64,000 bases of DNA from Macrostomum lignano (GCA_002269645.1 NIVC01001748.1:1-64000); one strand, 5' to 3'; counted from the stretch's first letter, positions 4,035-64,000 are shown. Translations and numbers: made by a program. Notes: a model not told the origin generated them from the letters alone.

Positions 4035-4156
4035 TTTTCTCGAAAATATAAAAAAAATTTTGAGGGTGACCACCCTGATAGAAAAGTTGAACTGTTTCTA
4101 CATCCTATCAGTAGCTTTAGGTTTATGAAGCTGGATAAAGTGGGTTTTAAACCTCA

Positions 4157-4603: not shown

Positions 4604-4618
4604 TTTTATTTTAATATT

Positions 4619-5655
4619 TTAATTAATTTCTGTGTCAGCCGGTATCACTAGGAGTTCAGCTCTAGTGAATGACCGCGTGGTGGATTTAGGGTTAAAGGCC
4701 TGAGATAAAAAGTAATAGTCACCGGAGTCGGAGGTAAAATGTCTGTCTATTTTATGTACATCAAGGCTGAAGTATGGATCTGTAGCTCTTCTTTTAGTGT
4801 CCTTCTCTAGCTCTCCAGGTAGATATAAAAAGCGTAGAAACTCAGAGTTTGTCAGTATGTATGGTGATTCAACTCCTGGAAGCTTAGGGTAGTTCGAGGT
4901 GTGTTTTGTGTTGTGCGTGTTGTGTGGGGTTGTCGTGTTGTTGTCTGTTCTATGAGATGCCTTAAGTTCGACAGTGTCTTGTTTAATTGCATGGGATGGT
5001 TTCAATCCAGTCATGCGTGTGACTTCATTGTTCAGTTGCTCTATAACAGTGGGGAGTCTTTCTGTCCACTTGGTATAGTACTGCCCCGCACTCAGTTTGA
5101 GTTCTTGCGCTGTCTGCTTAGTGAATAGTCTCTTGGCTAGAGTTAGATTGAATCTTTCCACAAAAGCCTGGTCTCTGTGCAAGTTTGTTCTGCCATAGCG
5201 AATCTCTGTGTTTTTCTTTTCCATAAGGGATTTCACTACACCCATGAATTCCTTACCCGGGTCGGTCATAAAGATTTGGGGTATGTGAGCGGAGAGTTTT
5301 TATAAATATCTTGCAGTGCGCTGGCAACAACCTCTGACTTCTTCGTCTTGAGTGGGCGAGCTTCCTTATATCTGGAAGCAATGTCAATAATTGTAAGAGC
5401 ATACTTGTAGCCTGAGTCATTGGGGAGAAACAAAAGATCTGCTTGGTGCGCTTCATTAGGTTTATAAATACTGAAATGGGGCCTTTCAAATTTTACTGGT
5501 GGGAAATAGACTTGAAAGACAGCCTGCTTAGAGAGCCATTTTTTTACTGTAGCTTTTGGTTCCTTACTCAGCTCCATGAGTTTACTAACGGCATTTTTGC
5601 CTACAAAGAAACCTTTGTCGCTGTAGTAGAGCTTTTGAAGTTTCTGATCTGTCAT
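4619..5655 (-). pseudogene. Retroviral-type (rve) DDE integrase of Polinton type, split by one frameshift near 5268
   Basis: ORFs 5266-5655 and 4619-5269 join at PKSL/MTDPGKEF (1-nt frameshift). Catalytic residues lie in HQADL, TDPGKEF and AFVERFN. YKYALTIIDIASRY is typical of this family. Confidence 0.9.
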
Positions 5656-5685
5656 TTATTTAAAAAGAAAATTTTAAATAAAATA

Positions 5686-6135
5686 ATGCAGCGCTCTGGT
5701 GGTAAAATAGATTCACATGGACTGATAGAAAAGCTTCCTCATCCAAACAAAGGCTGGACACTTCCCGGCTATAAATATTGCGGGCCTTTGAATCCACTTG
5801 AAATACAGCTGGATGGAAACAACAACCCAAATCCTGGGCATGAGCCTGTGAACGAGCTAGACTCTGTCTGCATGTGGCACGATGTTAAATATAGAGATTT
5901 TCCTGAGGAGAAGAATCGCTGGGACAAAGAAATGCTTAAGAGACTAGACAATATAGGGGCTTCAAGCGGATTTCGTGAGTCGATCGCTCGGAAGCTAGTT
6001 AAAGCTGTTATTTTTAGTAAGACAAAACTGGGGTTGGGGGTTCAAGGCGAAGGTGGGGTGGGTTTTGCATTGCACGCGCCAAGTCAAGAACTAGGAAGAC
6101 TGTTGAAAGAGCTGGGGGTTGAGAGAGCAGAATGA
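5686..6135 (+). CDS. Parvovirus VP1-type phospholipase A2 domain protein (149 aa)
   Basis: ATG at 5686 lies inside track ORF 5443-6135. Motifs TLPGYKYCGPLN (Ca-binding loop, YxGPxN) and EPVNELDSVCMWHDVKY (HDxxY catalytic dyad). Confidence 0.88.
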   Translation: MQRSGGKIDSHGLIEKLPHPNKGWTLPGYKYCGPLNPLEIQLDGNNNPNPGHEPVNELDSVCMWHDVKYRDFPEEKNRWDKEMLKRLDNIGASSGFRESIARKLVKAVIFSKTKLGLGVQGEGGVGFALHAPSQELGRLLKELGVERAE

Positions 6136-8234: not shown

Positions 8235-11200
8235 CTGTAAACACCCTAATATAGATTCTGGCGTGGTTCAAATCCTGCAGCATTGATTCGCCTCCGATTC
8301 CAATGGCTCGAATTATTCCTTCAAGCAAGTCTAGAATATCCGTCAGCAGTTTGATCCAGTAGGACACCTCTTTAATAATGCCGTAGAGCACCTGAAATTC
8401 AAGCATTGCAACTGTCGTAATCAGCGATTGATTATTGTTGTACGCAATTGCGTTGAAGGAATTGAATATTTGCAAAGACTCAGTGTTAGAGTCTGAGGGT
8501 CACAATTTAATAATTTTTAGTTGTCATTAGTATCTGCTTGTCCGTTTATGGCGGCCCTAATTAAAAAATTCCTTTTCAGATATTTTGGCTTCTTTCAAAA
8601 AGTAATTAAAGTTCATTTGGGATCATGAATTCTTTTGATATACATATGTATTACTTCTGGACTGAGCTTTATGGCCTCTTCTACATAGACCACATCATTC
8701 ATCAAGTTTGACGCATCATTCATCAAGTTTGACGAATCATTCATCAAGTTTGACGCATCATTCATCAAGTTTGACGCATCATTCATCAAGTTTGACGAAT
8801 CATTAATCAAGTTTGACGCATCATTCATCAAGTTTGACGAATCATTCATCAAGTTTGACGCATCATTCATCAAGTTTGACGCATCATTCATCAAGTTTGA
8901 CGCCTCAGTCATCAAGAATGACGCATCATTCATCAAGTTTGACGCATCATTCATCAAGTTTGACGCATCATTCATCAAGTTTGACGCATCATTCATCAAG
9001 TTTGACGCATCATTCATCAAGTTTGACGCCTCAGTCATCAAGTTTGACGCCTCAGTCATCAAGTTTGACGCATCATTCATCAAGTTTGACGCCTCAGTCA
9101 TCAAGTTTGACGCATCATTCATCAAGTTTGACGCCTCAGTCATCAAGTTTGACGCCTCAGTCATCAAGTTTGACGCATCATTCATCAAGTTTGACGGCTC
9201 ATTCATCAAGAATGACGCCTCAGTCATCAAGTTTGACGCCTCAGTCATCAAGTTTGACGCCTCAGTCATCAAGTTTGACGCATCAGTCATCAAGTTTGAC
9301 GCATCAGTCATCAAGTTTGACGCCTCAGTCATCAAGTTTGACGCCTCAGTCATCAAGTTTGACGCCTCAGTCATCAAGTTTGACGCACCATTCATCAAGT
9401 TTGACGCACCATTCATCAAGTTTGACGCATCATTCATCAAGTTTGACGCATCATTCATCAAGTTTGACGCATCATTCATCAAGTTTGACGCATCATTCAT
9501 CAAGTTTGACGCCTCATTCATCAAGTTTGACGCCTCAGTCATCAAGTTTGACGCATCATTCATCAAGTTTGACGCATCATTCATCAAGTTTGACGCCTCA
9601 GTCATCAAGTTTGACGCACCATTCATCAAGTTTGACGCATCATTCATCAAGTTTGACGCCTCAGTCATCAAGTTTGACGCCTCAGTCATCAAGTTTGACG
9701 CCTCAGTCATCAAGTTTGACGCCTCAGTCATCAAGTTTGACGCCTCAGTCATCAAGTTTGACGCATCATTCATCAAGTTTGACGCATCATTCATCAAGTT
9801 TGACGCACCATTCATCAAGTTTGACGCACCATTCATCAAGTTTGACGCACCATTCATCAAGTTTGACGCATCATTCATCAAGTTTGACGCATCATTAACC
9901 AAGTTTGACGCACCATTCATCAAGTTTGACGCATCATTCATCAAGTTTGACGCACCATTCATCAAGTTTGACGCATCATTCATCAAGTTTGACGCATCAT
10001 TAACCAAGTTTGACGCACCATTCATCAAGTTTGACGCATCATTCATCAAGTTTGACGCATCATTCATCAAGTTTGACGCATCATTAACCAAGTTTGACGC
10101 ATCATTAACCAAGTTTGACGCACCATTCATCAAGTTTGACGCATCATTCATCAAGTTTGACGCCTCAGTCATCAAGTTTGATGCATCATTCATCAAGTTT
10201 GACGCATCATTCATCAAGTTTGACGGCTCATTTATCAAGAATGACGGCTCATTCATCAAGTTTGACGCATCAGTCATCAATTTTGATGCATCAGTCATCA
10301 AGTTTGACGCCTCAGTCATCAATTTTGATGCATCAGTCATCAAGTTTGACGCATCATTAACCAAGTTTGACGCATCATTAACCAAGTTTGACGCACCATT
10401 CGTCAAGTTTGACGCATCAGTCATCAAGTTTGACGCATCAGTCATCAAGTTTGACGCATCATTCATCAAGTTTGATGCATCAGTCATCAAGTTTGACGCA
10501 TCAGTCATCAAGTTTGACGCATCAGTCATCAAGTTTGACGCATCAGTCATCAAGTTTGACGCATCATTCATTAAGTTTGATGCATCAGTCATCAAGTTTG
10601 ACGCATCAGTCATCAAGTTTGATGCATCAGTCATCAAGTTTGACGCATCAGTCATCAAGTTTGATGCATCAGTCATCAAGTTTGACGCATCAGTCATCAA
10701 GTTTGATGCATCAGTCATCAAGTTTGACGCATCAGTCATCAAGTTTGACGCATCAGTCATCAAGTTTGACGCATCAGTCATCAAGTTTGACGCATCAGTC
10801 ATCAAGTTTGATGCATCAGTCATCAAGTTTGACGCCTCGTGCGTCGAATTAATCAATTCTGGAACCATGGTCCGACGTGTCCACTCAGCGAGAATTATCC
10901 GTGAGATCAATAAGTGTGAACTCACCATATAGATCACTATGCCGACAGCAGTATAGGTGCAAATTATTCTTGGCGAATAGCGGAATCCAATTCTTCTTTG
11001 ATAGCTGATGGCTCTCAGGGCTTGCTTGAGCTTTTCTCTGACTGAATTGCTTTGAGCACTGCGTTGACAATTGAATGAAAGGTGAAGTCGGTTCGTAACC
11101 AATTGCTACAGCGTTTCAAGGTCTCGTGGAGCCACCCAAAAAGTAACTAAAAGTTATTTCTATTAATTTTCAGGGCAAACTCACCTGTCTCTACTATCTG

Positions 11201-23085: not shown

Positions 23086-25830
23086 TAGTAGTAGTAGTAG
23101 TAGTAGTAAGAGAATTTGGCTCAGGCAATTAGCCTGTTTGGCCAATATATTATAGAGCTATGTATTTGGAATTTTCGAATATAGAAGTTTATAAAGACGA
23201 TTTGACGACGATTTGCTGCGAAGTTATTGTAAAAGATAAAGTATTTGAAAGCGCGCCAGAATTTTTACGGTATTTTTAGACGAAAAGTGACAACGAGTAT
23301 AAATATTAATACAAAAATGAGTACAAATTACGAGGTATAGCTTTAATTGCGAGATTACTTTGGTAAGCGAGTTTGTAAAAAAAAAAAGATGTAGTATTTT
23401 TGAAAGCGCGTGATATTTCAAAGCGTGAAAAACGAACATAAACAATACTTCGAAAGAATTTTACGTTTAACGAATAACGACGATTTAAATATAGGAAATT
23501 AAAAAAGACAGTAAATGAATAAACAACTGAAAAGCGGATTTGTTACACTGCTGATGTATCTGATTCAGTTTGTTTAACTGTTTTAGCTATTCATGACTTC
23601 ATATATTTTAGCTACACCAGTGAGCTCTTTTCTGACTCTTTTTTCATTTGTAGCATATCCTATCTTGTGTATTTGATTGCTATTTAAGAGGTATTGACAG
23701 AAGTATTTTTTCCTGATCTCTTCAGTTTGTGGACATTCGGTCAAGTAGTGTAGAATGTCAGAACCATTTCGCGCTCCACACATTTTACATGGTTCTTGAG
23801 AAAAAAAGTTGGGTGTAATCTCGCATTTCAGTTTTAGGAGGGTTGTTAAGAATTTTTTGTTTCTAAATGTACATGGAAAGAAATCTGAAAGGTCGGGCCT
23901 GCAGATTTTTTTGTAGAGATAGGCGTTTTTGTAGAATTTAATATGTTGCTGATTCTCTAGCTTTTGGCTAAGTTCTCTTTCTCTGTGTATCTTGAGGTGC
24001 TTTTTCACTAGGTATTTCTCGTTATTAAAGCTTTGGGAAAGTTTATCTTCAGTTTGTGCTTTTAGGTCTATACTTTCTAGTTTCTTTAGTACATTCATTT
24101 TCCATGGATTTTTTTGGCCGTTGTTTGAGTAGAAAATTTCTAGAGTCGTTTGGCAGAGTTTTTTGTGTCTAATCTTCAGCCAGTAGATGAGGTAGGTTTT
24201 AGCGATTCGTTGAGAGATTGGAGTAAGCTCAAGTTCTGATGATACCACACTGTTGCTAGCAAATTTTGGTAGATTGAGGAGATATTTGTAGAATTTCAGC
24301 TGAATATTATCAATAGCTTTTGTATCAGACATGGTAGCCAGAGGGCCCCAGAGCTCACAACCGTAAGTGATAACGGGGGTAACAAGCGCGTCAAATAGTC
24401 TGCGAATGAGTGTGATGTCTAGGGACGTATTCTTTACCCTATGGAGTAGGGAAAACATGGCTGTATATCCCTGCTTAGTTTGGTGTTCAATACATTTTTT
24501 AAAGCTGTTTTTTGGTTCAAAAATAATTCCCAGGTATTTAAATTCATTTACTTCCTCTATTTCTTGGTTGTCGTAGTATATTTTTGTAGCAATGCTTTCT
24601 GTGTCGTTTTTTTGTCTGGTATTGCCCTGCATGAACTTTGTTTTGCTTGCGTTTACTTTCAAGTAATTTTGTTTGCAGTAATTTTCCATAGTCGTAAATG
24701 TGTCTTGAAGTTCGTCTTTGTTTTTAGCTAGAATGGCTTGATCGTCTGCAAAGAGTAGGATGAGTGGGAAAGCAGATCTCGTAAGAGAGCGCCTAGCGCT
24801 AGAGAGTTCAAGATATTCAACAATGTCGTCAATATATCGTTCAAAAAGGATGGTAGAGAGAGGGTTGCCTTGAAGAACACCTTTAGATATTGGGATTGGC
24901 TGGGTTTCATCATCATCATCATCATTTTTTAGAATGAAGCAGGCATTTTTATGCATGTTCTTGATAAGTTCCGTCATTTGACCTTTAATACCCTGGTTAT
25001 CCGTTTTGTGCCAAAGGGTTGGTTGATTTAAGCTATCGAAGGCTTTTTCATAGTCAACAAATCCAATAAAGAGTTCTTCTTTGTTGTAGATGGATTGGTT
25101 TATAATGTTGTAAAGATTAAAACATTGGTCGATTGTGCTGTGATTGGGCTTGAAACCGTATTGGTACTTTGATATAAGATTGTTTGCGTATGCTAGGTTT
25201 TCGAGTCTGGATTTAATAATTTGGCAAAAGAGCTTGCCAAGAATTGGTTGAATGCAGATTCCTCTGTAATTGTTGGGGTCGGCACTGCTGCCTTTGTTTT
25301 TATAAATCGGATGAAGTGTATTTGTTATCCAACTAGTTGGGAAGGTTCCTTGTTTGAGTGCTTCGTTGAAAAGTGAGCATAGGAGGTCAGCAAGTTCGTT
25401 CTCGAGGTATTTAAGTGTTTCTACATATACTTTATCGTGCCCAGGTGCTTTGTCGGTTTTGAGCTTTTTAATATGTTTTATAACTTCTTCTTTGGTGAAT
25501 GGGGCATTGAAATCCTCTAAATCAGCCAGAATAGGGTTGTCAAGGTGAAGATTGTATGATAGTCTAATGCTGCTGTCTTGTTCAGTTACAAGATTTTGAA
25601 AGTGTATGATAAATTTTTCATCAATTGTTACTCTGTTGTTTGAGGGATTTGGTGTTTTTAATAAGTTCCAAAGTTGTTTTGTATCGTTTTGAATAAAGGC
25701 TTGGTTGATCATGTTGTCTGCACAGAGAGTTGTTTCAAATTTCCATGAAGTGAGCTTTTTTTCGTATGCTTTTTTGAGTTGTACTTTGCTTGAGAGGTTG
25801 TTGGGTATCTAGAGTCGCGGAGTGTTCACT
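23086..25830 (-). mobile_element. 5'-truncated non-LTR retrotransposon (LINE; CR1/L2/RTEX-like, clade not resolved) with a (TAC)n tail
   Basis: The RT ORF starts without an endonuclease domain. A ~470-nt 3' UTR is followed by a (TAG)7 run at 23086-23108 on the + strand. Confidence 0.85.
23583..25712 (-). CDS. LINE reverse transcriptase (709 aa from ATG; the frame is open 32 codons further upstream)
   Basis: KAPGHD, PIYKNKG...NYRGI, QYGF, FVDYEKAFDS, GVLQG..LS, LLFADD, FKYLG, YGCELWG and a C-terminal CxxC...HxxxxC. Confidence 0.95.
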   Translation of the reverse strand: MINQAFIQNDTKQLWNLLKTPNPSNNRVTIDEKFIIHFQNLVTEQDSSIRLSYNLHLDNPILADLEDFNAPFTKEEVIKHIKKLKTDKAPGHDKVYVETLKYLENELADLLCSLFNEALKQGTFPTSWITNTLHPIYKNKGSSADPNNYRGICIQPILGKLFCQIIKSRLENLAYANNLISKYQYGFKPNHSTIDQCFNLYNIINQSIYNKEELFIGFVDYEKAFDSLNQPTLWHKTDNQGIKGQMTELIKNMHKNACFILKNDDDDDETQPIPISKGVLQGNPLSTILFERYIDDIVEYLELSSARRSLTRSAFPLILLFADDQAILAKNKDELQDTFTTMENYCKQNYLKVNASKTKFMQGNTRQKNDTESIATKIYYDNQEIEEVNEFKYLGIIFEPKNSFKKCIEHQTKQGYTAMFSLLHRVKNTSLDITLIRRLFDALVTPVITYGCELWGPLATMSDTKAIDNIQLKFYKYLLNLPKFASNSVVSSELELTPISQRIAKTYLIYWLKIRHKKLCQTTLEIFYSNNGQKNPWKMNVLKKLESIDLKAQTEDKLSQSFNNEKYLVKKHLKIHRERELSQKLENQQHIKFYKNAYLYKKICRPDLSDFFPCTFRNKKFLTTLLKLKCEITPNFFSQEPCKMCGARNGSDILHYLTECPQTEEIRKKYFCQYLLNSNQIHKIGYATNEKRVRKELTGVAKIYEVMNS

Positions 25831-51400: not shown

Positions 51401-54400
51401 ATTTACAGAACGCATTAGTCTTGCTAATATTTTGAGCTTTTTTCCGAAATGAATTTTTATAGATGTTTCCGTCACTCATTCATGAAGTCAGCGTAAGTTT
51501 GTTTCGGAATCCATGTACGAACATCAAATTCAAAGCAGAATTCTGTTCAATATTTATAGCTGTCTGTGTTAGACAATTCCTGGTATTAAGTATGGACAAT
51601 GTGCACATATACTTAGCTTAGTTCAATCGGAGTATAAAAATTAGTTTAGTCGCAGGTCTAGTACGTTTAAATTCGCTTTCGCTTGCTAATTTATGAACAA
51701 AGCTCGGCTTCTCTGGAGAAAACAGGTTTTTTATGCTCTTGTTATCAGTTTCGTGTAATAAAATGCCGACCTACTTAGTGTTAATGTTACTTTTAGTAGT
51801 TTATCAGGAAGTATCGTTTTTGCTACTTTTGCTCTACTTGGAGTGGAATGATGAGATAGCGAGTGAGATGATGAGATAGCGAGTGAGATGATGGGATAGC
51901 GAGTGAGATGATGGGATTGGGAGTGAGATGATGAGAGTGAGTGAGATGATGAGATAGCGAGTGAGATGATGAGATAGCGAGTGAGATGATGGGATAGCGA
52001 GTGAGATGATGGGATTGGGAGTGAGATGATGAGAGTGAGTGAGATGATGAGATAGCGAGTGAGATGATGAGATAGCGAGTGAGATGGTAGGATTGGGAGT
52101 GAGATGATGAGAGTGAGTGAGATGATGAGATAGCGAGTGAGATGATGGGATTGGGAGTGAGATGGTGATATTAGAAGTAGACGATGAGATTGGGAGTGAG
52201 ATGATAAGATTAGGAGTGAGCTGATAAGATTGGGAGTGAGATGATAAGATTAGGAGTGAGATGATGAGATTAGGAGTGAGATGATGAGATTAGGAGTGAG
52301 ATGATGGGATTGGGAGTGAGATGATGAGATCAGGAGTAGACAATGAGATTGGGAGTAAGACAATGATATAGACAGTGAGATGATAAAGTGCGTGGATGAG
52401 AGAATGATCAACAAAGTACATTTGAGAGTCATTATGAATGAGTGAGTGAATAAATGAAATGAAATATTTTAGGCCATAGCAGCCTTTTGTATCGTGCATA
52501 CATTCAGTAAGTGCAATAGTAGCTTTACTGATTATCCATGTCGCTTCAATACTTATGTAGCTCCTGTTGAGGTATTCGAAATATTTCTCTGCTAGGTTGA
52601 TTATTAAGATTGCACAACACGCGTTTACTCCGCAGGTTTGGTCGCTGGAGGTGAAAGAGCAGGGCGCCCTGGCACTGTGGGCTCTGGCAGGTGCCACGCA
52701 TGTACAGCAGAGGGCCATAGCTGAGAGAATTGGCATCCAGCAGCTCATAGAGATACTCATGACCAAGTCTGAGAAGTTGCAGTTTGTTGGTAAGATCTGT
52801 GATTTCTAAATTCAAATTTAAATATGGGATCGCATTAGAATCGCAAGAATCGCAAGAATCAAAGAGTTGCTCCAGAGTTGCTAGAGTCACTTGTGAGTTG
52901 TTTGCAATGACTCTTTAGCAATTCTTGTCAGGGTAATGTTTTCAACGGGAATGTTTTAAGCTTCTTTAGTACAATAAGTATTTGTAGCTATTTGCCTGTA
53001 CACAATTGTACTTTTCAATTTTAAAGTTTACGTGTACTTAAATTCAACTTTGAAAAGGCATGCTAAAGTACATTTTCATCTATCATTTAAAGTTCAATTG
53101 TACTTTTAGTGTGTCTATGTGTACTTTTAAAGTACACTTGCACTTTTAAAGTACACACTTGCACTTTTAAAGTACACTTGCACTTTTAAAGTACACACTT
53201 GCACTTTTAAAGTACACTTGTACATTTTAAAAGTGAACTTGCACTTTTTAAGTAGACGCTAGATTAAAAGTACATAAAAATCTCGTGTGTATCTCCCCGA
53301 ACTCAGCGTGCGTGGCCCTGACAGCCCTGGCCCGAGACAGCGTCACCAGGCAGAACGAAGTGGCTAAGGAGGGCGGTCTGCAGCCTCTGGTTCGCATCAT
53401 GAAATCGCCCAAATCCAGTCAACGGGTTCTTCTATACGCCGTGCAATGCTTGGCCGCCCTGTGCGTCGGCGTTGCCCATAGCAACAATCCGGCAACGCAG
53501 AGCCGCCTAGCCGAGGAAGGTGCAATCGAGTTGCTAACTGAACTGTTAGCTAATTCGCCAGTGCCTGAGGTGCAAGCTGAAGCCGCCTACAGCCTGGGCT
53601 GCCTTGTGCTGCGCAATGGCGACAACCAGCTGCAACTGAAGCAGCTGCCGCAGTTCTCCTATTCTCTTCTGCTGGCACTTTTGGATGCCGAGACGCCGAA
53701 AATTCGTCTGCGAGGATGTCAAGCTTTGGCTGGTAAAACTAGTGTGACTACTGCTTTCAGTAGTGTAGTTGCAATTTCTCAGTTGCAATTTTTTGCTGGA
53801 ATAAATATGATACAAATATTCCCTAGCAAATCTTTAAATCCCCATATTTAATCTACATGTAATCATGACGGCTAAATGTCGCTCAAAGTCAAATGTCACT
53901 GACAGCCAAATGTCACTGACTGTCAAATGTCACTTTAGATGTCACTGGCCATTGTCAGTTTTACGATGCCTTAAAGTTAATTAATAAATTCGATTAGCCT
54001 ACTAGCTACTGTAAGTAGCGTGCAAGAATGTGTCAGCATTTTCAACGAAACCACCCCACCCTGCAGTGTTCGCTTTCAACAACACCCGGCAACAGTTTGC
54101 CATCCGTGAAGCTGGCGGAATCAGCATTGCAGCTCTGGAGGAGTTCCTGGCCAGCTCAGATCCCGCCGCCAGGTGTCACGCCGCTTTCCAATCCGTTGTG
54201 CTCACAAGGGACATTGTGAACGCCGATCCGGTGTCCTTGACCGCCAAGGGCATTCAAATTCTGGTCGGACTGCTGAAGGTGGGCTTGAGGACTTCGAAGA
54301 ATTAGGACTTATTCTTTCTATGTGTGGTGGAATTTCTCTAAATGGGATTTTTCTAATTGAGATTTCTGTAAATGGGATCTCTCTAAATGGGATTTCTCTA

Positions 54401-55705
54401 AATGGGATTTCTCTAAATGGGATTTTTCTAATTGAGATTTCTGTAAATGGGATCTCTCTAAATGGGATGTCTCTAAATGGGATTTCTCTAAATGGGATTT
54501 TTCTAATTGAGATTTCTGTAAATGGGATCTCTCTAAATGGGATTTCTCTAAATGGGATTTCTCTAAATGGGATTTTTCTAATTGAGATTTCTGTAAATGG
54601 GATCTCTCTAAATGGGATGTCTCTAAATGGGATTTCTCTAAATGGGATTTTTCTAATTGAGATTTCTGTAAATGGGATCTCTCTAAATGGGGTGTCTCTA
54701 AATGGGATTTCTCTGAATGGGATCTCTCTGAATGGGATCTCTCTAAATGGGATTTCTCTAAATGGGATCTCTCTAAGTGGGGTCTCTCTAAGTGGGGTCT
54801 CTCTAAATGGGATTTCTCTAAATGGGATTTTTCTAATTGAGATTTCTGTAAATGGGATCTCTCTAAATGGGATTTCTCTAAATGGGGTCTCTCTAAGTGG
54901 GGTCTCTCTAAATGGGATTTCTCTAAATGGGATTTTTCTAATTGAGATTTCTGTAAATGGGATCTCTCTAAATGGGGTCTCTCTAAGTGGGGTCTCTCTA
55001 AATGGGATTTCTCTGAATGGGATCTCTCTGAATGGGATCTCTCTAAATGGGGTGTCTCTAAATGGGATTTCTCTGAATGGGATCTCTCTGAATGGGATCT
55101 CTCTAAATGGGGTGTCTCTAAATAGGATCTTTCTAAATGGGATTTCTCTGAATGGGATCTCTCTAAATTGGATTTCTGCAGAATTTCATATAGGCATGAA
55201 TTTACCATGTATTTAGATATGCTTGATGAACCGTATTCACAGAGAGACTGGAACTTCTCAGAAAGGTTTAAAATCGAAGCATCCCTCGCCCCCAACCCTG
55301 CTTAAACAGACTCCGCGCTCATCCTCGGCACTGCCAGTGTCGCAGCAGCAGAGCGCCGCCGCCGCCGAAGAGCTGGTGGAAACCGCCTGCGCCTACCTGG
55401 CCTCCCTGGCGCACTCGCGCTCCGGCCTGAAGGACGCCATCATCACGGCTGGCGGCCTCGACCGTCTGGTCCGCCTGCTGCTGGACTCGGACAGCCGGAC
55501 AGTCCGCTCGGCTGCCTCCGTGGTGCTGGGCTACTTGACCTTCAACAGGACCGCCGCCCGCCTGCTGCTCAAAGCCTGTCGCGAGAATCCCGGCCTGTTC
55601 TACAAGCTGGAGGCCGCGCTGCCGCTGCCCGATGCCCGCATCTGCGATGAGTTCCTGGCCGACTTCCGGGCTGCCGAGAAAATCGGCCTGCCCTGCCAGT
55701 TGTGA

Positions 55706-55791
<86 letters not shown>

Positions 55792-56087
55792 GTCTGTCTG
55801 TCTGTCTGCCTGTCTGTCTGTCTGTCTGTCTGTTTGTCTCTCAGTCAGTGTCCCAGCATCCCAGCCTCGCCCGGCCCGCCACCCGCAGCATGGAGGTGAA
55901 CGGCGGCCACCCGATCCTCCCCAGTCGAGCCGCCACCGCCAAAGCTCGTCCTCGGCCGCCCACCTCTGTCGGCCAGGCCGCGGGGCCCTCGTCTTCAACC
56001 GCCAGCGCCGCCCAGCAGCAGAAGATGCTTCGCAGTAAATCGGCCCCAGCGCATCGCTTGATTCGGCCTGGCAGCAACAAGCGATAA
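29379..56087 (+). CDS. ANKAR: Ankyrin and armadillo repeat-containing protein, 1432 aa. Exons: 29379-29675, 30248-30574, 31712-31938, 32765-33238, 33798-33987, 34720-34936, 38348-38549, 39097-39833, 49060-49153, 49676-49826, 52636-52789, 53307-53732, 54067-54278, 55310-55701, 55889-56087
   Basis: All 14 introns are GT-AG and phase-consistent; total 4299 nt. ANKAR-specific [11 protein letters not shown]...NYDQ...LPPAY.DT.IGQ, ankyrin repeats ([21 protein letters not shown]), ARM repeats, and C-terminal GLP...EVNGG. Confidence 0.93.
29750..29995. repeat. 30-bp minisatellite (ANKAR intron 1)
   Basis: Unit GAGCCTTGACATCTCAGCAATTCCCCCCGT. Confidence 0.9.
30600..31500. repeat. ~29-31-bp G-rich minisatellite (intron 2)
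   Basis: Unit GGGAATCCCTGGATTGGGG(G)ATCTCTGTATC. Confidence 0.95.
32020..32730. repeat. 22-bp minisatellite (intron 3)
   Basis: Unit GATTCTTCCCAAATCCCAAAAT. Confidence 0.95.
34040..34650. repeat. 37-40-bp minisatellite (intron 5)
   Basis: Unit TGATATAACAGGGAGGGATCTGAAGCATTAGGGAAG(GAG)C. Confidence 0.95.
36500..36680. repeat. (TCTG)n microsatellite; a second one fills ANKAR intron 14 at ~55707-55840
   Basis: Visible directly. Confidence 0.97.
37150..38110. repeat. 33-bp minisatellite with a 298-bp higher-order repeat (intron 6)
   Basis: Unit CGGCAGCTTCCTTTGATGTCCTCACAATTACCT. A diagnostic variant recurs at 37447 and 37745. Confidence 0.95.
38590..38970. repeat. 23-bp degenerate minisatellite (intron 7)
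   Basis: Unit CGTAGATTATCCTCAGTGATTAT. Confidence 0.85.
39850..41410. repeat. 26-28-bp minisatellite with higher-order blocks (intron 8)
   Basis: Unit TTGCTGGGCCAGCCTCCCAGATCCT(CA)G. Confidence 0.96.
42240..42960. repeat. 32-bp minisatellite (intron 8)
   Basis: Unit CTCAAAACTTGATAAGCTCGAAGCTTCATCAA. Confidence 0.93.
44260..45830. repeat. CT-rich low-complexity tract including (CT)n; a similar tract lies at 47250-47670
   Basis: Polypyrimidine on the + strand; source of the false Ser/Leu-rich and Arg/Glu-rich ORFs. Confidence 0.95.
49198..49604 (-). mobile_element. Second, inverted copy of the 28834-29253 MITE in ANKAR intron 9
   Basis: The reverse complement aligns across the element; the right TIR GGCCCATCTAGTTATT is at 49589-49604. 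Confidence 0.8.
51130..51350. repeat. ~31-33-bp minisatellite (intron 10)
   Basis: Unit GTGTACATTGGGGCAGAGAG(A)TTTTGTCTGTG. Confidence 0.9.
51845..52350. repeat. 20-bp minisatellite (intron 10)
   Basis: Unit GATGAGATAGCGAGTGAGAT. Confidence 0.93.
54330..55180. repeat. 15-bp minisatellite with a ~75-bp higher-order unit (intron 13)
   Basis: Unit GAT(T/C)TCTCTAAATGG. Confidence 0.95.
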
Positions 56088-56859
56088 TTTTCGCTGTAAA
56101 ACTCGAAACAAATTTTAATATACTCAACTTACTACTAGATAACGGAGCTCATTTTTAATTGTTCTTTTGTTTAAATTTGATTTTTCGTTAACTTAGTTAT
56201 TTTGTGCTTTAAATTTCTTAAAAAAGAAGTACTATGTTTCTATTATTTATTTTCCGCCGCACTTTTCTCTTTTTCTCTACTTAGATGAGTAGCAAAATTA
56301 GCGTTTTTTGCTAAAAAAAGAAAATTTACACAAACCACCGTGCCTTGTTGAACAAGCGAATTTTTTCAACACAGTTTTTTTCCTCTTGTGATAGAATTAA
56401 TCCGTCCAATTTTTCTAAGATGTTCTTTCTGTGATATTAAATTATTAGATCTGAACTTCTTACACTCGCTGCCGTGTATTAATGTGATTATAGGATTTTG
56501 TGTGCAAGTTTTATTTATCTATCTATTCCTGTTTTAGATCTATAGACCTCTCTTTTTTCTTGCACTGAATTGACGAAACTTCGAATTCAAAAGAGTTAAA
56601 AGTTTTCTTTTGAAATTACTCGCTTTATTTCTTTGTTGCATATAGTTATGTAGAAAGATTATATTATATATTTTATTTTATATTATACTCAAATATATCG
56701 GTTCACGCTTTGATGCCATGCACTCGCGCTGTTCTCAGCGGAAAATTTTGTGCTTGGATTTTTTTTAGAAAGTCAGGCTTGCTGTTCGCTGGCGTTGCAT
56801 CTGTGTGCCGTCAACCCTCTGGCAAATATTGAACTTTTATGGAATTCCCCATAGATTTT

Positions 56860-57245
56860 CCTAATATACATCAAAGCACGGATTACCCAATGTACATCAT
56901 AGCAGGGATTTCCCACGGATTTCCCACGGATTTCCCTAATGTACTTCATTGCACCGATTTCCTACGGATTTCCCTAATTTACTTGATAGCAGGGATTCCC
57001 CATGGATTTCCCGAATGCACTTCATAGCAGGAATTCCCCACGGATTTCCTCAATGTATTGTAAATCATAGCAGGGATTCTCCACGGATTTCCCTAATGTA
57101 CATCATAGCAGGGATTCCCCACGATTTTCCCTTATGTCCATCATAGCAAGGGTTCCCCAGGGATCTCCCCAATTTACTTAATAGCAGGGATTCTCCTTGG
57201 ATTTTCCCAATGTGCTTCCTAGCAGGGATTCCCCACGGATTTCCT
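56860..57245. repeat. Degenerate ~45-bp repeat between ANKAR and POP1
   Basis: CATAGCAGGGATTCCCCACGGATTTCCCTAATGTA recurs ~8 times. Confidence 0.8.
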
Positions 57246-57265
57246 CATCGCTTGCTCTATTCCAG

Positions 57266-60200
57266 GATTCATCACCTCAACGACGCCAAGGAGCGGCCGC
57301 TGCGTCAGCTGACGAAATCGAAAACCCTCAGCAGGAGGGGATTCGAGTCCTGGACTTCGCCGCTGCCAGAGCCACCGAGCTGCAGCACCTGGAGTCTCAG
57401 CTGGGCCTGGTGTCCAGCGGCTTCGTCCACGGACTGCAGCGGCTTCCCCGGCGAATGCGACGACGGGCGGCCAGTCATAATCCGCGTCGGTTGCCGTTGC
57501 GACTCCGGCGCTCGACGTTCAACGAGGCCCAGGCGCTGATGGCCAAGCAGAAGCTGCGCCGGCAGCAGAAGAAACGCTTGAAGCGACTGTTCCGAAGGCG
57601 GAACCGGACTAGGCTGGGGAAAGAGCGGCCTGATTGGCTGGCCACGCACCTGTGGCACGCCAAGCGATTTCATATGGTGACCAAGTGAGTGCATTCTTGG
57701 CTGAACTAATTGCGTATGAAAACTGAACCTGTTGCTTAACAACGCATCTAACAACCCATGGGAACCGCCCCTGATAACCCTTGAGAATCGCCCCTGATAA
57801 CCCGAGCGAATCGCCCCTGATAACCCTTGAGAATCGCCCCTGATAATCCATAAGAATCGCCCCTGAAAACCCATGAAAATCGCCCCTGTTAATCCTTGAG
57901 AATCGCCCCTGAAAACCCGTGAGAATCTCCCCTGATAAGCCTTGAGAATCGCCCCTGATAACCCTTGAGAATCGCCTCTGATAACCCATGAGAATCGCCC
58001 CTGATAACCCTTGAGAATCGCCCCTGATAACCCTTGAGAGTCGCCCCTGATAACCTATGAGAATCGCCCCTGACAACCCATGAGAATCGCCCCTGACAAC
58101 CCATGGGAATCGCCCCTGACAACCCATGGGAATCGCCCCTGACAACCCATGAGAATCGCCCCTGATAACCCTTGAGAATCGCCCCTGATAACCCTTGAGA
58201 ATCGCCCCTGATAACCCTTGAGAATCGCCCCTGATAAGCCTTGAGAATCTCCCCTGACAACCCATGAGAATCGCCCCTGATAACCCATGAGAATCGCCCC
58301 TGATAACCCTTGAGAATCGCCCCTGATAACCCTTGAGAATCGCCCCTGATAACCCTTGAGAATCGCCCCTGATAAGCCTTGAGAATCTCCCCTGAAAACC
58401 CATGAGAATCGCCCCTGACAACCCATGGGAATCGCCCCTGATAACCCTTGAAAATCTCCCCTGATAACCCTTGAGAATCTTCCCTGATAACCCGGCAGAA
58501 TCGCCCCTGATACGCCCCTGATAACCCTTGAGAATCGCCCCTGACAACCCTTGAGAATCGCCCCTGATAAGCCTTGAGAATCGTCCCTGATAATCCATAA
58601 GAATCGCCCCTGATAACCCGGGACAATCGCGCCTGATAATCCATAAGAATCGCCCCTGAAAACCCATGAGAATCGCCCCTGTTAATCCTTGAGAATCGCC
58701 CCTGAAAACCCGTGAGAATCTCCCCTGATAAGCCTTGAGAATCGCCCCTGATAACCCTTGAGAATCGCCCCTGATAACCCATGAGAATCGCCCCTGATAA
58801 CCCTTGAAAATCTCCCCTGATAACCCTTGAGAATCTCCCCTGATAACCCTTGAGAATCGCCCCTGACAACCCTTGAGAATCGCCCCTGACAACCCGCAGA
58901 ATCGCCCCTGACAACCCGGCAGAATCGTCCCTGACAACCCAGCAGAATCGTCCCTGACAACCCGGCAGAATCGTCCCTGACAACCCAGCAGAATCGTCCC
59001 TGACAAACCGGCACAATCGTCCCTGACAAACCGGCAGAATCGCCCCTGACAACCCGGCAGAATCGCCCCTGACAACCCGGCAGAATCGCCCCTGACAACC
59101 CGGCAGAATCGCCCCTGACAACCCGGCAGAATCGCCCCTGATAACCCGGCAGAATCGCCCCTGACAACCCTTGAGAATCGCCCTCAATAACCAGCTAAAA
59201 CCTGAATCGCACGCCTATCGCAGGTGGGGCTACCGCCTCGCCGAGCGGCCCACCGACAAAATTCTCCGACCGTGTCTTCGCGCAGCCGCCCGCGGCGCTC
59301 TGCTTCACGACGCCTCCTACCTGCACCCCTGCCTGCTCTCAGGCCCCGCATCCAGCCTGGCCAATATCCTGGCTCGCCTATTAGACCCTGATGAAGCTGC
59401 CAGACTCCGCAGCCGCCTGCTATCTGATCGTCAATTCTCGATGAACCTGACTGTACACCGAGTGGACAGCTATCCCTTGAACTGCTTGGGACCGGTGCGG
59501 CTGGACGGTCTGGCCACCGGTACCTGCTGGCTGTGGTGTCATCCATTATTCAGCTCTCAGTTGGCTGTTGAATTGGAGACGGCTGCGAGATCTGATGGGG
59601 AATCTGAGAGCAGCGCCAATCGGGTGGCAGTTGATTGGCAACGAGGCCAGTTTTGTTGTTATCGTCTGCTTGGACCGGCCGTTGAGGATATCATGGACAA
59701 GTTCTTAACGCAACCGCCCGACGGTTGGTGTCCTAGATAATTGTTCATTTATTAGTCTAGTTTTATCCCCAAATAGCCAACACTTTTATCTCCAAATAGC
59801 CCACACTTTTATCCACAAATATCCCACACTTTTATTCACAAATATCCCACACTTTTATCCACAAATATCCTACACTTTTATTCACAAATATCCCACACTT
59901 TTATCCACAAATATCCTACACTTTTATTCACAAAATCCTACAAATTTATCCCCAAATAGCCCACACTTTTATCTCCAAATATCCCACACATTTGTCCCCA
60001 AATATCCCACATATTTATCCCCAAATATCCCACACTTTTATCCCCAAATATCCCACACTTTTATCCACAAATATCCCACACTTTTATTCACAAATATCCC
60101 ACACTTTTATCCACAAATATCCCACACTTTTATCCACAAATATCCCACACTTTTATTCACAAATATCCCACACTTTTATTCACAAATATCCCACACTTTT

Positions 60201-61954
60201 ATTCACAAATATCCCACACTTTTATCCCCAAATATCCTACACTTTTATCCACAAATATCCCACACTTTTATTCACAAATATCCCACACTTTTATTCACAA
60301 ATATCCCACACTTTTATCCACAAATATCCCATACTTTTATCCACAAATATCCCACACTTTTATTCACAAATATCCCACACTTTTATCCACAAATATCCTA
60401 CACTTTTATCCACAAATATCCCACACTTTTATTCACAAATATCCCACACTTTTATCCCCAAATATCCTACACTTTTATCCACAAATATCCCACACTTTTA
60501 TTCACAAATATCCCACACTTTTATCCACAAATATCCCACACTTTTATTCACAAATATCCTACACTTTTATTCACAAAATCCTACAAATTTATCCCCAAAT
60601 AGCCCACACTTTTATCTCCAAATATCCCACACATTTGTCCCCAAATATCCCACATATTTATCCCCAAATATCCCACACTTTTATCCACAAATATCCCACA
60701 CTTTTATTCAAAAATATCCTACACTTTTATTCACAAATATCCTACTAATTTATCTCCAAATATCCCACACTTTTATTCACAAATATCCCACACTTTAATT
60801 CACAAATATCCCACACTTTTATTCACAAATATCCCACACTTTTATTCACAAATATCCCACACTTTTATCCACAAATATCCCACACTTATTCACAAATATC
60901 CTACAAATTTATCTCCAAATATCCCACAAATTTATCCCCAAATATCCCACACATTTGTCCCCTAGTATTTTACATAATTATCCCATCATCACACACTTCT
61001 ATCCCCAAGAACTCAACTCCCATATCTGATCACACCCCAGGCCTCTCAGCCGAAGCCCAGTCCCACTGGAATCGCTGGTTGAATCGTCGAAGTCAGTCAA
61101 GCGACACTCTGCACAGTGTGCAGCTGCTGGTGTCCACCTTGCCAGATCAGCAGCAGTGCCGCGTACCTCGCGACATCGCGACTCTGCCAGCGACCTCCGC
61201 CGTTAGCGACGCTCTCGGTGTGCCGCTGACTTCTTCAACGTCAATAGCAGCGGTTGAAGCCTCTGAAGGTCAGCTGCTCCAGCTTACCCTGCTCCGCCGA
61301 GGCCGCTGTCCTCAGTCGGCGAGCTGGGACATCGTGACACCGCGGCAAGGCTCTGCGGCGTCCTCCGCTCGCCGTGTGTGGTTCTCTCTGGTGTCCCGCT
61401 GCCCCATTCAGGTCGGCGGCCTGCGGGAACTGGCCCTGGCCGAGGCGGAGCTCGAGTCCCAGTCCGCTTGGTCGTTTCCGGCCGGGTTCCCCGACTCGGT
61501 TGCTGCGCCGGCGCCGCTGGGAGACGGCCTGGATCATCTGGTTCGCGACCGGCGGCTGCTGGCGGTCTTGGACCGGCTGGTTCGAGCTCGGCTGCCGGCC
61601 GGGTCGCCAAGATTCACGTCGCACCACGCGTTGATGCTTCGGCCGAGTCTGTCAACGTCCGGAGTTCGAATCCGGATCAGACCGATCGAAGCCGGACTGC
61701 CGAGAGTTGGAGGCGAACTGCTGGCGTGGTGTCGGGATGGCGGCGGCAGCTGGGCCCGTCTGGGACGGGTGCTGGACGGCAGGCAGTCCAACCGGACCGG
61801 TCAGGCCACTGGGGAGGCAGTGGTCTCTCTAATCAGTCTGATTGAATCTGCCAATGAAGGCGGCCGAGGCTTGAACTGCGGCTGGTTCGGGTTCAGAAAT
61901 CCGCGGTCGTCTGCGGTGCGAAAGTGCCGATTGGAAGTGCCGGGGTGGGACTGA
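57266..61954 (+). CDS. POP1: RNase P/MRP protein subunit POP1. Exons 57266-57684, 59224-59723, 61041-61954 (610 codons + stop); no initiator ATG found
   Basis: VLDFAAARATE, LQRLPRRMRRRAASHNPRRLP, WLATHLWHAKRFHM, KWGYRL, LHDASY, WLWCHP, and POPLD-type WDIV...W...GGLRE...FP..FPDS. Splice phases are 2 and 1 and are consistent. Confidence 0.92.
57760..59185. repeat. 23-bp minisatellite (POP1 intron 1)
   Basis: Unit GAATCGCCCCTGATAACCCTTGA; produces the false 432-488 aa minus-strand ORFs. Confidence 0.96.
59780..60960. repeat. 23-bp minisatellite (POP1 intron 2)
   Basis: Unit AATATCCCACACTTTTAT(T/C)CACA. Confidence 0.96.
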
Positions 61955-62039
61955 TCGTTTGAGGATTCGATCTGCGATATTGAATTTCATTTAGGCAATC
62001 TTTAATCTATTACTAACTCATTGTATCATAAACTTCCCT

Positions 62040-62570
62040 AAGTATCCCTTTTCTAAATCCCATTATCCCATTGTTTGAATCCCATTCTCAAGTCCCATTA
62101 TCCCATTCCTAAATCCTATTATCCCATTTCTAAATCCCACTATCTCATTCCTCAATCCCATTATCCCATTCCCAAATCCCATCATCCCATTCCTAAATCT
62201 AATTTTCCCATTCCCAAATCCCATTATCCCATTCCCAAATCCCACCATACCATTCCCATATCTCATTATCCCATTCCTAAATACCATTATCCCATTCCCA
62301 AATCCCATTATCCCATTCCTAAATACCATTATCCCATTCCCAAATCCCATTATCCCATTCCTAAATACCATTATCCCATTCCTAAATGCCATTATCCCAT
62401 TCCTTAGTTCTTTTTTCCCATTCCCAAATCCCATTATCCCATTCCTAAATACCATTATCCCATTCCCAAATCCCATTATCCCATTCCTAAACACCATTAT
62501 CCCATTCCTAAATACCATTGTCCCATTCCTTAGTTCTATTTCCCCATTCCTAAATCCCATAAACACATCC
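62040..62570. repeat. 21-bp minisatellite downstream of POP1
   Basis: Unit ATTCC(C/T)AAAT(C/A)CCATTATCCC. Confidence 0.93.
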
Positions 62571-62999
62571 CTATATTTTCGTTTTCTGTTCCTTAGTTCC
62601 TTTTGACTGACAAGGTTGTTTAACGCAATTATTATTTCCTAATGAAAACTCAATAATGTTTCGTTAAAGCTTTTATATGCGATTGCTGGCATTTGTAATG
62701 CTTTTAATTTAGTCTGAAACGAGAATATAGTTTCAGCTTGATGCCTTTGCGCACATTGCAAATCCGTTTTTGTCGAGGAAAACCGTTTTTGGAAAAAATA
62801 TTTTGCATTTTTTCCTTTTTATCGGCACATTCTACTACATATTTCGCTATTCCTACTTGCAGTAGACTGTTTAGAAGATAGCAGAATATTGATCTCAAAC
62901 TACTGCCGAATTGCCAAATTTGCAACTACGGCTCAATGGAGATGATATCGCCTTTTTTAATATTGCCAAGATAAAAGTTGCAGGGCTGAGATTATAAAA

Positions 63000-63380
63000 A
63001 TAGGATTGAGATTAGGCATAGTCGAGATGAGATACGGATAAGATTTTATATTATACACTGGTGAGATTAGACACGATTGAGAATAGGCACTACTGAGATT
63101 AGACACTGTAGAGATTGCGCAAAAGTGAGATTAGATACTGGAGAGATGAGACACAGGTGAGATGAGAGCAAACTGAGATTAGACACTGGAGAGATTTGAC
63201 ACGAGTGAGATTAGACACTGGAGAGATTAGACACACAGGTGAGATTAGACACTGTAGAGATTAGGCAAAAGTGAGATTAGACCCTAGAGAGATTTGACAC
63301 GAGTGAGATTAGACACAAGTGAGATTAGACACTAGAGGTTAGAAACGAGTGATACAAGACAAAGCTGAGATGAGACGGGG
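63000..63380. repeat. Degenerate ~20-bp repeat
   Basis: GAGATTAGACAC core repeated. Confidence 0.8.
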
Positions 63381-64000
63381 CCAAGATTGACAAGAATATT
63401 AGTTATGCGTATGCTAAGATTCAGTTGAGAATTGGGATTACAGCATTGGGTTAAGCATATAAGTCGCAGTGCTTGTGTAGTTAAGGGCGGTTATAATTAA
63501 TGCAAACAATTCCTTAAGCAGAGAGCAGAGCATAAATTAATAAATGAAGCAACTCCGACACTCTGAAAGAGTGAATAAAATCCAACTGGTTGCGCAACGG
63601 CCAAATTTGCGATGCTCGTGAAGGCAGGGGGGGAGAGAGAAATAGTCAATTTAATACTAGTAGAATTATATTGCTAGAAACTCTTGTGCTACAGTTGAAC
63701 TTACGGATTCAGATGGATGCTTTTTGTCAATAGATTTCTTACTGCAGTACGTCTGCGATCTGTAGCGTGTAACCACGATGTGTAAGCATAGTGTGCTTTG
63801 GGCAATATTGGTAATCAGTTGATCCCTTATTGCTAGCGGGTCAAAATGCTAACTTGCAAGGGGAACTGATGTCTGGATGGGATTAGTTGGTGAAAATTTG
63901 CATGCAAGGCTTGTAGCTTTTATCTGGGATCCTGCTTGTAGATTGCTTCTTACGGCTACATGACTGGAGTGCCCAGTCTAAATGACTAAAGTGCCTAGTC

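What the first reader, a model, noticed from the sequence alone, without database searches (positions are those of the whole stretch)
57240..57684. POP1 has no start codon: a phase-0 acceptor fits initiation from a spliced-leader AUG
Seen: the reading frame opens after a good acceptor, CTTGCTCTATTCCAG|GAT TCA (57266). There is an in-frame TAG at 57182, and the first in-frame ATG falls inside the conserved RRMRRR motif. I found no ATG-bearing exon with a strong phase-0 donor in the 1.18 kb back to the ANKAR stop. Known: flatworm spliced leaders end in a conserved AUG, shown in schistosomes to act as initiator Met. Inference: SL trans-splicing gives M-DSSPQRRQ..., so an essential RNase P/MRP subunit would depend on trans-splicing for its start codon.
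Basis: partly seen in the sequence, partly recalled or inferred. Interest (0 to 1): 0.7.

Follow-up and report, generated by a model that had tools for sequence, protein, structure and literature searches.

The report
POP1 start codon from spliced leader
In the flatworm Macrostomum lignano the gene for the RNase P/MRP protein POP1 has no start codon of its own and most likely borrows the AUG at the end of the trans-spliced leader, a mechanism already known in flatworms, so this is a clean but ordinary example.

Summary
The window is Macrostomum lignano contig NIVC01001748.1, bases 1-64000. The POP1 reading frame opens at 57266, directly after CTCTATTCCAG. An in-frame TAG lies at 57182. The first in-frame genomic ATG (57455) encodes Met64, inside the invariant LPRxMRRRAxSH motif. 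The 36 residues before Met64 are homologous to schistosome, human and yeast POP1, so translation must start upstream of it. No ATG-bearing exon with a GTRAG donor lies in the 1178 bases back to the ANKAR stop.

- M. lignano has one 35-nt spliced leader, and it ends in ATG.
- The acceptor fits the published trans-splice motif [T/C]TNCAG.
- The RNA-seq-based GenBank model PAA64465.1 (610 aa, "partial") starts its CDS exactly at 57266. That annotation pipeline cuts transcripts at peaks of leader-containing reads.
- Two further copies of the gene in the assembly have the same start.

I could not reach the reads themselves.

Supply of the initiator Met by the flatworm leader AUG was shown in schistosomes in 2006, and Macrostomum genome papers mention it. 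This is a new member of a known kind and of low interest.

The parts
56085..56087 (+). Stop codon (TAA) of the upstream ANKAR-like gene (ankyrin plus armadillo repeats, 1447 aa)
   Evidence: Sequence. Called gene and Pfam families.
56088..57265 (+). Intergenic stretch of 1178 bases: ANKAR 3' UTR plus the presumed POP1 outron. It holds no ATG exon with a GTRAG donor.
   Evidence: The stretch is about 97-98% identical in the two other genomic copies, apart from repeat copy number.
56863..57244 (.). Tandem array (about 38-bp unit, roughly 8-10 copies) ending 21 bases before the acceptor AG. Copy number differs between the three gene copies.
   Evidence: The acceptor segment itself is not derived from the repeat (799 of 2000 shuffles score as well).
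57182..57184 (+). In-frame TAG that closes the frame upstream
57240..57265 (+). Pyrimidine tract and 3' splice acceptor TTCCAG, the presumed spliced-leader trans-splice acceptor
   Evidence: It fits the published trans-splice motif [T/C]TNCAG. It is the only AG in 57150-57340 that does so, with 16 of 20 pyrimidines. It is invariant in all three copies.
57266..57684 (+). POP1 coding exon 1 (DSSPQRRQ...RFHMVTK), phase 0 at its 5' end, donor AA|GTGAGT
   Evidence: The spliced model equals PAA64465.1 exactly.
57455..57457 (+). First in-frame genomic ATG. It encodes Met64, an internal residue of the invariant LPRxMRRRAxSH motif.
   Evidence: It aligns with the internal Met of human POP1 PRHMRRRAMSHN.
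57685..59223 (+). Intron 1, almost entirely a 23-bp tandem array (57753-59183)
59224..59723 (+). POP1 exon 2 (acceptor cgcag|G, donor G|GTTGGT)
59724..61040 (+). Intron 2, containing a 23-bp tandem array (59761-60962)
61041..61954 (+). POP1 exon 3, including the stop TGA at 61952-61954

Best explanation
Base 57266 is a spliced-leader trans-splice acceptor of the Macrostomum lignano POP1 gene. The pre-mRNA upstream of it (the outron, which includes a 38-bp tandem array) is discarded. The 35-nt leader ...UUAUUGCAUG is joined to GAUUCAUCA.... The leader's terminal AUG is then the first AUG of the mature mRNA and is in frame with the POP1 ORF. Scanning ribosomes would start there and make a 611-aa protein, M-DSSPQRRQ....

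Shown here: the gene structure, the absence of a genomic start codon, homology upstream of the first ATG, the fit to the trans-splice motif, and the coincidence with the annotated 5' end.

Inferred: that the leader is really joined at this base, and that its AUG is the codon used.
For: - The organism is M. lignano and the window is NIVC01001748.1 bases 1-64000.
- The published leader ends in ATG (PMC8629364; PMC5173321).
- The published trans-splice acceptor motif is [T/C]TNCAG. Here it is TTCCAG, with 16 of 20 pyrimidines, the only such site in the open stretch.
- The GenBank CDS PAA64465.1 is flagged 'partial' and begins at exactly 57266.
- The annotation pipeline places 5' ends at peaks of leader-containing reads (PMC5730564).
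- The two other genomic copies (PAA83870.1 and PAA76012.1) have the same 610-aa 'partial' models and an identical acceptor.
- An independent older annotation (UniProt A0A1I8H8X0 and A0A1I8I792) also lacks a Met and starts at LFQDSSPQ.
- Residues 28-63 match S. rodhaini POP1 residues 22-57 (44% identity, E = 1e-7).
- The alignment to human POP1 (6AHR) starts at residue 24 and to yeast Pop1 (6AGB) at residue 26. The first genomic ATG therefore lies inside conserved sequence.
- With M added at 57266 the N-terminus is about as long as in schistosomes: 27 against 21 residues before the conserved V.
- No GTRAG-donor ATG exon lies upstream.
- All three copies keep intact ORFs, with pN/pS about 0.41. 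Only 17 differences underlie this, so power is low.
- The flatworm leader AUG is a documented initiator (Cheng et al. 2006, as cited). Macrostomum genome authors note it as the start codon (PMC10468722).
Against: - I saw no leader-junction read, cDNA, Ribo-seq or peptide.
- Searches for the junction sequence and for an M-prefixed protein found nothing, but the collections searched are not suited to this.
- The three copies are about 98-99% identical and were annotated by one pipeline, so they are not independent evidence.
- The first 63 residues alone give no Pfam hit.
- A weak phase-0 mini-exon exists in the repeat (ATG 57015-57059|GTAAAT).
- Position -3 of the leader AUG is U, a poor Kozak context by vertebrate rules.
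Confidence: 0.8

Rival explanations
1. A cis-spliced 5' exon carrying a genomic ATG exists and was missed by the annotation. It could be the weak mini-exon ATG 57015-57059|GTAAAT inside the tandem array, or an exon further upstream. It would splice to the same acceptor at 57265.
For: - One phase-0 ATG...GT candidate exists.
- Repeats hamper read mapping and transcript assembly (noted in PMC8629364).
- Parasitic flatworms often share acceptors between cis- and trans-splicing (PMC12582326).
Against: - The candidate donor GTAAAT lacks both the +5 G and the exonic AG. It scores 4.5 of 9 against 7.5 for the real donor, and no GTRAG donor is present.
- The RNA-seq-guided model has no such exon in any of the three copies.
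- The N-terminus already matches schistosome POP1 in length.
Confidence: 0.06
2. The mRNA is trans-spliced at 57266, but translation starts elsewhere. It could start at Met64 or a later AUG, giving an N-terminally truncated POP1. Alternatively these copies are decaying duplicates and a functional POP1 lies elsewhere in the genome.
For: - The leader AUG has U at -3.
- The genome is partly duplicated, with three near-identical copies.
- Pfam detects only POP1_N and not the POPLD or C-terminal domains.
Against: - The leader AUG would be the first AUG and is in frame, so leaky scanning past it would be needed.
- Residues 24-63 are conserved with human, yeast and schistosome POP1.
- All three copies keep 610-codon ORFs, with pN/pS below 1.
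- The protein search found no other M. lignano POP1.
Confidence: 0.06
3. The transcript is not trans-spliced. Translation starts at a near-cognate codon in the 81-base open stretch upstream (for example TTG 57197 or GTG 57212). The annotated 5' end at 57266 would then be an artefact of poor read mapping in the repeat.
For: - The frame is open from 57185, with in-frame TTG and GTG codons.
- The repeat ends only about 21 bases upstream.
Against: - A mapping artefact would place the end at the repeat boundary (about 57245), not on the base after a YTNCAG acceptor. That motif is expected by chance at about 1 in 512 positions.
- The upstream stretch is repeat sequence with no homology to POP1.
Confidence: 0.03

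Closest known systems
[quoted passage not shown]
   Same: - The flatworm leader ends in AUG.
- The acceptor is in phase 0 with the ORF.
- There is no usable genomic AUG, so the leader supplies the Met.
- As quoted, the leader AUG is in frame in 28% of S. mansoni trans-spliced transcripts, and more than 40 cDNAs need it.
   Different: - The species is a free-living macrostomid.
- The gene is POP1.
- Nothing has been shown experimentally for this gene. The schistosome work included translation assays.
slORFs: ORFs created by start codons within spliced leaders (slORFfinder, PMC9851317)
   Same: The start codon is donated in trans by the leader. Standard genome annotation misses it or flags the CDS as partial.
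   Different: slORFfinder was applied to nematodes, Oikopleura and trypanosomes, with near-cognate NUG codons and Ribo-seq support. It reported no flatworm Ribo-seq data.
M. lignano trans-spliced gene set and operons (Wudarski et al. 2017, PMC5730564; Ustyantsev and Berezikov 2021, PMC8629364)
   Same: - The acceptor motif [T/C]TNCAG fits.
- POP1 is an evolutionarily conserved gene, the class those authors found over-represented among trans-spliced genes.
- The upstream gene is on the same strand. The repeat-adjusted distance is about 796 bases (1178 minus 382), under their 1-kb operon threshold.
   Different: - In the locus tag, POP1 is gene 'g1' of its own transcriptional unit (naming convention), so no ANKAR-POP1 operon is annotated.
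- Those papers do not discuss leader-AUG initiation gene by gene.

Membership tests
Flatworm mRNAs initiated at the spliced-leader AUG | The organism has a spliced-leader RNA whose exon ends in AUG | tested here: met
   Checked in the literature. The M. lignano leader is CGGTCTCTTACTGCGAAGACTCAATTTATTGCATG. No leader gene lies in the window itself.
Flatworm mRNAs initiated at the spliced-leader AUG | The first coding exon begins at a 3' splice acceptor with no cis donor upstream to pair with | tested here: met
   TTCCAG|G at 57260-57266 fits [T/C]TNCAG, with 16 of 20 pyrimidines. No GTRAG donor follows an ATG in the 1178 bases upstream.
Flatworm mRNAs initiated at the spliced-leader AUG | cDNA or RNA-seq reads show the leader joined at that acceptor | not testable with these tools
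   Indirect only. The GenBank CDS starts at exactly 57266 and is flagged partial. The pipeline sets such ends from leader-read peaks. The junction search in the available collections was empty and uninformative.
Flatworm mRNAs initiated at the spliced-leader AUG | The leader AUG is in frame with the ORF, with no intervening stop | tested here: met
   ATG plus 57266... reads MDSSPQRRQ... through the whole 610-codon ORF.
Flatworm mRNAs initiated at the spliced-leader AUG | No genomic in-frame AUG lies upstream of conserved protein sequence, so the leader AUG is required | tested here: met
   The frame has a stop at 57182 and no ATG until 57455 (Met64). Residues 24/28-63 are homologous to schistosome, human and yeast POP1.
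Flatworm mRNAs initiated at the spliced-leader AUG | Translation demonstrably starts at the leader AUG (reporter, Ribo-seq or N-terminal peptide) | not testable with these tools
   No such data can be reached here.
POP1 (RNase P/MRP protein subunit) | POP1 N-terminal domain (PF06978) with the RRRAxSH and WHAKRF motifs | tested here: met
   PF06978 E = 5.8e-29. Human POP1 6AHR E = 1.2e-34 and yeast 6AGB E = 1e-12. Invariant columns.
POP1 (RNase P/MRP protein subunit) | POPLD (PF08170) and POP1 C-terminal (PF22770) domains | tested here: inconclusive
   Neither is reported by Pfam for this 610-aa protein. The GGLRE...FP block aligns with orthologues and weakly with human residues 614-668 (domain 2, not significant).
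Downstream gene of an M. lignano operon | Upstream gene on the same strand within 1 kb after subtracting repeats, and the downstream gene trans-spliced | tested here: inconclusive
   1178 minus 382 repeat bases gives about 796 bases. Trans-splicing is known only indirectly. The locus tag suffix g1 means POP1 is the first gene of its annotated transcriptional unit. Polycistronic RNA cannot be tested here.

The most novel reading that the evidence does not exclude
POP1's loss of its own start codon might be a conserved, selected arrangement in Macrostomum or more widely in flatworms, not a neutral accident. It would make production of RNase P/MRP, and hence tRNA and rRNA maturation, strictly dependent on spliced-leader supply. 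That would couple translational capacity to trans-splicing activity in neoblasts, where trans-spliced genes are enriched.
Probability: 0.1. Interest if true: 0.5.

Novelty: new member of a known kind. Interest (0 to 1): 0.25.

Why it matters
The practical value is for annotation. In M. lignano, GenBank proteins flagged "partial" that begin on the base after a YTNCAG acceptor may in fact be complete once the leader's Met is added. PAA64465.1, PAA83870.1 and PAA76012.1 would then be full-length 611-aa POP1 proteins.

Biologically it adds a core housekeeping gene from a free-living flatworm to the class of mRNAs that cannot be translated correctly without trans-splicing. That fits the view of trans-splicing as a ratchet: once the leader supplies an AUG, the genomic one can be lost. 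It opens no new question. The mechanism has been known since 2006, and Macrostomum genome papers mention it.

Tried and rejected
- **Junction in DNA collections.** An exact search for TTGCATG+GATTCATCACCTCAACG in the metagenome contig collection gave 0 hits. That collection is not expected to hold M. lignano transcripts, so this is uninformative.
- **Junction in protein collections.** A protein search with M prefixed to exons 1-2, meant to catch transcript-derived ORFs, returned only one distant ENA protein. It did not even return the self hit. Uninformative.
- **Per-gene trans-splicing tables.** Supplements of PMC5816591, PMC12582326 and PMC5730564 had no entries for Mlig033392, Mlig015767, Mlig015158 or POP1. 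Cheng et al. 2006 is not held in the library.
- **Acceptor born from the repeat.** I tested whether the acceptor and first codons are a diverged copy of the upstream 38-bp repeat. Rejected: the local alignment score is no better than 799 of 2000 shuffles.
- **Comparison of the three copies.** They are too similar to give independent evidence on the acceptor (about 1% CDS and about 2-3% intergenic divergence).
- **Leader gene in the window.** None found.
- **Non-coding RNAs in 54000-64000.** There was one sub-threshold IRES_Bip hit. ARAGORN called a 91-nt 'tRNA-Ala' inside GC-rich exon 3. I take both as false positives.
- **Pfam on the first 63 residues alone.** No hit. Homology there rests on pairwise and PDB alignments.

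Full report
**Identity of the window.** A spliced model of the three coding blocks downstream of the finding gives a 610-aa protein. The blocks are 57266-57684, 59224-59723 and 61041-61954. The protein is 100% identical over its full length to GenBank PAA64465.1, 'hypothetical protein BOX15_Mlig033392g1, partial [Macrostomum lignano]'. That protein is encoded on NIVC01001748.1 of assembly GCA_002269645.1 (Mlig_3_7). Its gene range is 57266-61954 in record coordinates, so the window is bases 1-64000 of that contig. Pfam assigns POP1_N (PF06978, E = 5.8e-29). The best solved-structure relatives are human POP1 (6AHR chain B, E = 1.2e-34) and yeast Pop1 (6AGB). The upstream gene encodes a 1447-aa ankyrin plus armadillo-repeat protein. 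It ends at TAA 56085-56087.

**The observation.**
- The sequence reads gcttgctctattccag|GATTCATCACCT, with the AG at 57264-57265.
- Translating from 57182 gives *QGFSLDFPNVLPSRDSPRISSSLALFQ-DSSPQRRQ.... There is an in-frame TAG at 57182 and no ATG in the 27 codons before 57266.
- The first in-frame genomic ATG is 57455-57457. It encodes Met64, in ...GLQRLPRRMRRRAASHNPRRLP....
- In a nine-species alignment Q58, P61, R65-R67, A68, S70 and H71 are invariant.
- Human POP1 has a Met at the homologous position (PRHMRRRAMSHN). This ATG therefore encodes an internal residue of the most conserved motif of the family.

**Coding sequence extends upstream of that ATG.**
- Residues 28-63 match Schistosoma rodhaini POP1 residues 22-57 (16 of 36 identical, E = 1e-7 for the pair).
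- The HMMER alignment to human POP1 starts at residue 24, and to yeast Pop1 at residue 26.
- The first 63 residues alone give no Pfam hit, so this rests on pairwise and PDB alignments.
- Schistosome POP1 proteins begin with Met 21 residues before the conserved block. The M. lignano frame opens 27 residues before it. A Met placed at the acceptor gives an N-terminus of the expected length, and no conserved sequence is missing.

**Search for a conventional first exon.** I enumerated every ATG in 56088-57265 together with every downstream GT reachable without a stop. This gave 25 combinations, and none has the GT[A/G]AG donor typical of the species (donor consensus). The only phase-0 candidate of any quality is ATG 57015...57059|GTAAAT, inside a repeat unit. 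It scores 4.5 of 9 on a simple consensus scale, against 7.5 for the genuine exon-1 donor.

Among all AG dinucleotides from 57150 to 57340, only the one giving exon start 57266 fits the published trans-splice acceptor motif [T/C]TNCAG. It also has the best pyrimidine tract, 16 of 20. The AGs inside the repeat units (ATAGCAG|G) do not fit, and two of the four put the leader AUG out of frame.

**What the literature says about the organism.**
- M. lignano has a single 35-nt spliced leader, CGGTCTCTTACTGCGAAGACTCAATTTATTGCATG. It is found on about 30% of genes, and the top acceptor motif is [T/C]TNCAG (PMC8629364).
- The eLife transcriptome paper gives a longer 44-nt consensus that ends in the same 35 nt and notes it matches the previously published leader (PMC5173321).
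- The Mlig_3_7 annotation was built by trimming the leader from leader-containing RNA-seq reads and mapping them. Transcriptional units were then cut at the resulting peaks (the TBONE pipeline), and ORFs were called with TransDecoder (PMC5730564).
- A transcript that starts at a trans-splice site in phase 0 with no ATG would come out of that pipeline as a 5'-partial CDS beginning at transcript base 1. That is exactly what GenBank holds here.
- The chance that an arbitrary assembly end falls on the base after a YTNCAG motif is about 1 in 512 per position.
- An older, independent annotation also has no Met. UniProt A0A1I8H8X0 and A0A1I8I792 start at LFQDSSPQ, nine bases upstream of the acceptor.

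**Other copies.** The assembly holds two more copies, PAA83870.1 on NIVC01000399.1 and PAA76012.1 on NIVC01000850.1. Both are 610 aa, 'partial', begin DSSPQ, and have ANKAR upstream. The intergenic regions align at about 97-98% identity. The acceptor is invariant, and only the number of 38-bp repeat units differs. All three ORFs are intact. Between the window copy and the others there are 8 synonymous and 9 non-synonymous differences, giving pN/pS of 0.41. These are recent duplicates processed by one pipeline. They show that the missing ATG is not an assembly error, but they are not independent evidence for trans-splicing.

**Mechanism.** The most likely course is as follows.
1. Transcription starts either from an unmapped promoter in the intergenic region or by read-through from ANKAR.
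2. The outron is removed by trans-splicing of the leader to 57266.
3. The mature mRNA begins with a 32-nt leader 5' UTR, then AUG-GAU-UCA....
4. That AUG is the first in the mRNA and is in frame, so it initiates a 611-aa POP1.

The structural parts are shown. The junction and the initiation site are inferred. I put this at about 0.8.

Operon status is open. The distance after subtracting the 382-bp tandem array is about 796 bases, under the 1-kb criterion of PMC8629364. However, the locus tag suffix g1 marks POP1 as the first gene of its annotated transcriptional unit (naming convention). Those authors also note that units often break in repeat-rich spacers.

**Comparison with what is known.** This is the situation described for Schistosoma mansoni by Cheng et al. 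(J Biol Chem 2006). As summarised in PMC9851317, the leader AUG is in frame in 28% of trans-spliced transcripts, and more than 40 cDNAs need it to initiate translation. Papers on tapeworms and parasitic flatworms treat the terminal ATG as a conserved flatworm feature that can supply the start codon. [quoted passage not shown] I found no paper that names POP1 or these locus tags.

The finding is therefore a correct reading of the sequence and a new example of a known mechanism. It mainly explains why three GenBank entries are labelled partial.

**What I could not do.** I could not see reads, cDNAs, ribosome footprints or peptides. The junction search in metagenome contigs was empty, and so was the M-prefixed protein search, apart from one distant hit. 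Neither collection is suited to the question.

**Scores.** Interest is 0.25. A flatworm specialist would not be surprised, and the value lies in annotation. Novelty is 'new member of a known kind'.

Noticed in passing
window 367-6135, both strands: There is a cluster of virus- or Maverick/Polinton-like ORFs. A protein-primed B-family DNA polymerase (PF03175) appears to be split over several minus-strand ORFs (367-4073). One ORF has an adenovirus protein-X-like motif (4157-4603, PF05829). One plus-strand ORF has a parvovirus-type phospholipase A2-like domain (5443-6135, PF08398, E = 1.7e-13). It looks like a degraded endogenous element.
   Followed up: partly
window 23583-25712, minus strand: A 709-aa ORF carries a reverse-transcriptase domain (PF00078, E = 8.6e-32). 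It is a non-LTR retrotransposon-like insertion upstream of, or within, the ANKAR region.
   Followed up: partly
window 57753-59183, 59761-60962 and 62079-62560; also 54173-55216, 55706-55839 and 8613-11102: Both POP1 introns and many ANKAR introns are filled almost entirely by long tandem arrays of 15-23-bp units. Intron 1 of POP1 is 1539 bases, of which 1431 are a 23-bp repeat. The copies of the gene differ in intron length mainly through these arrays. The gene spans 4689, 3394 and 4933 bases in the three copies.
   Followed up: partly
UniProt A0A1I8FP40 (P0002), which corresponds to window ~55250-61954: The older ML2-assembly gene model fuses the ANKAR C-terminus to POP1 through a spurious 'exon' in the 38-bp repeat, and it contains frameshifted stretches. 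This is an annotation artefact. It probably arose because no start codon could be found for POP1.
   Followed up: yes
window 59224 (exon 2 acceptor), compared with L002:8847 and L003:10294: The first base of exon 2 is G in the window copy and A in the other two copies. The split codon is AAG in one and AAA in the others, and both encode Lys.
   Followed up: yes
POP1 protein, residues ~300-610 (window 61041-61954): M. lignano POP1 is short: 610 aa, against 780-1040 in other species. Pfam reports no POPLD or POP1 C-terminal domain, although the GGLRE...FP block aligns. The C-terminal half is unusually diverged or reduced.
   Followed up: partly
window 61510-61600, plus strand: ARAGORN calls a 91-nt tRNA-Ala(CGC) inside GC-rich POP1 exon 3. 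Rfam gives no tRNA hit there, so this is probably a false positive.
   Followed up: partly
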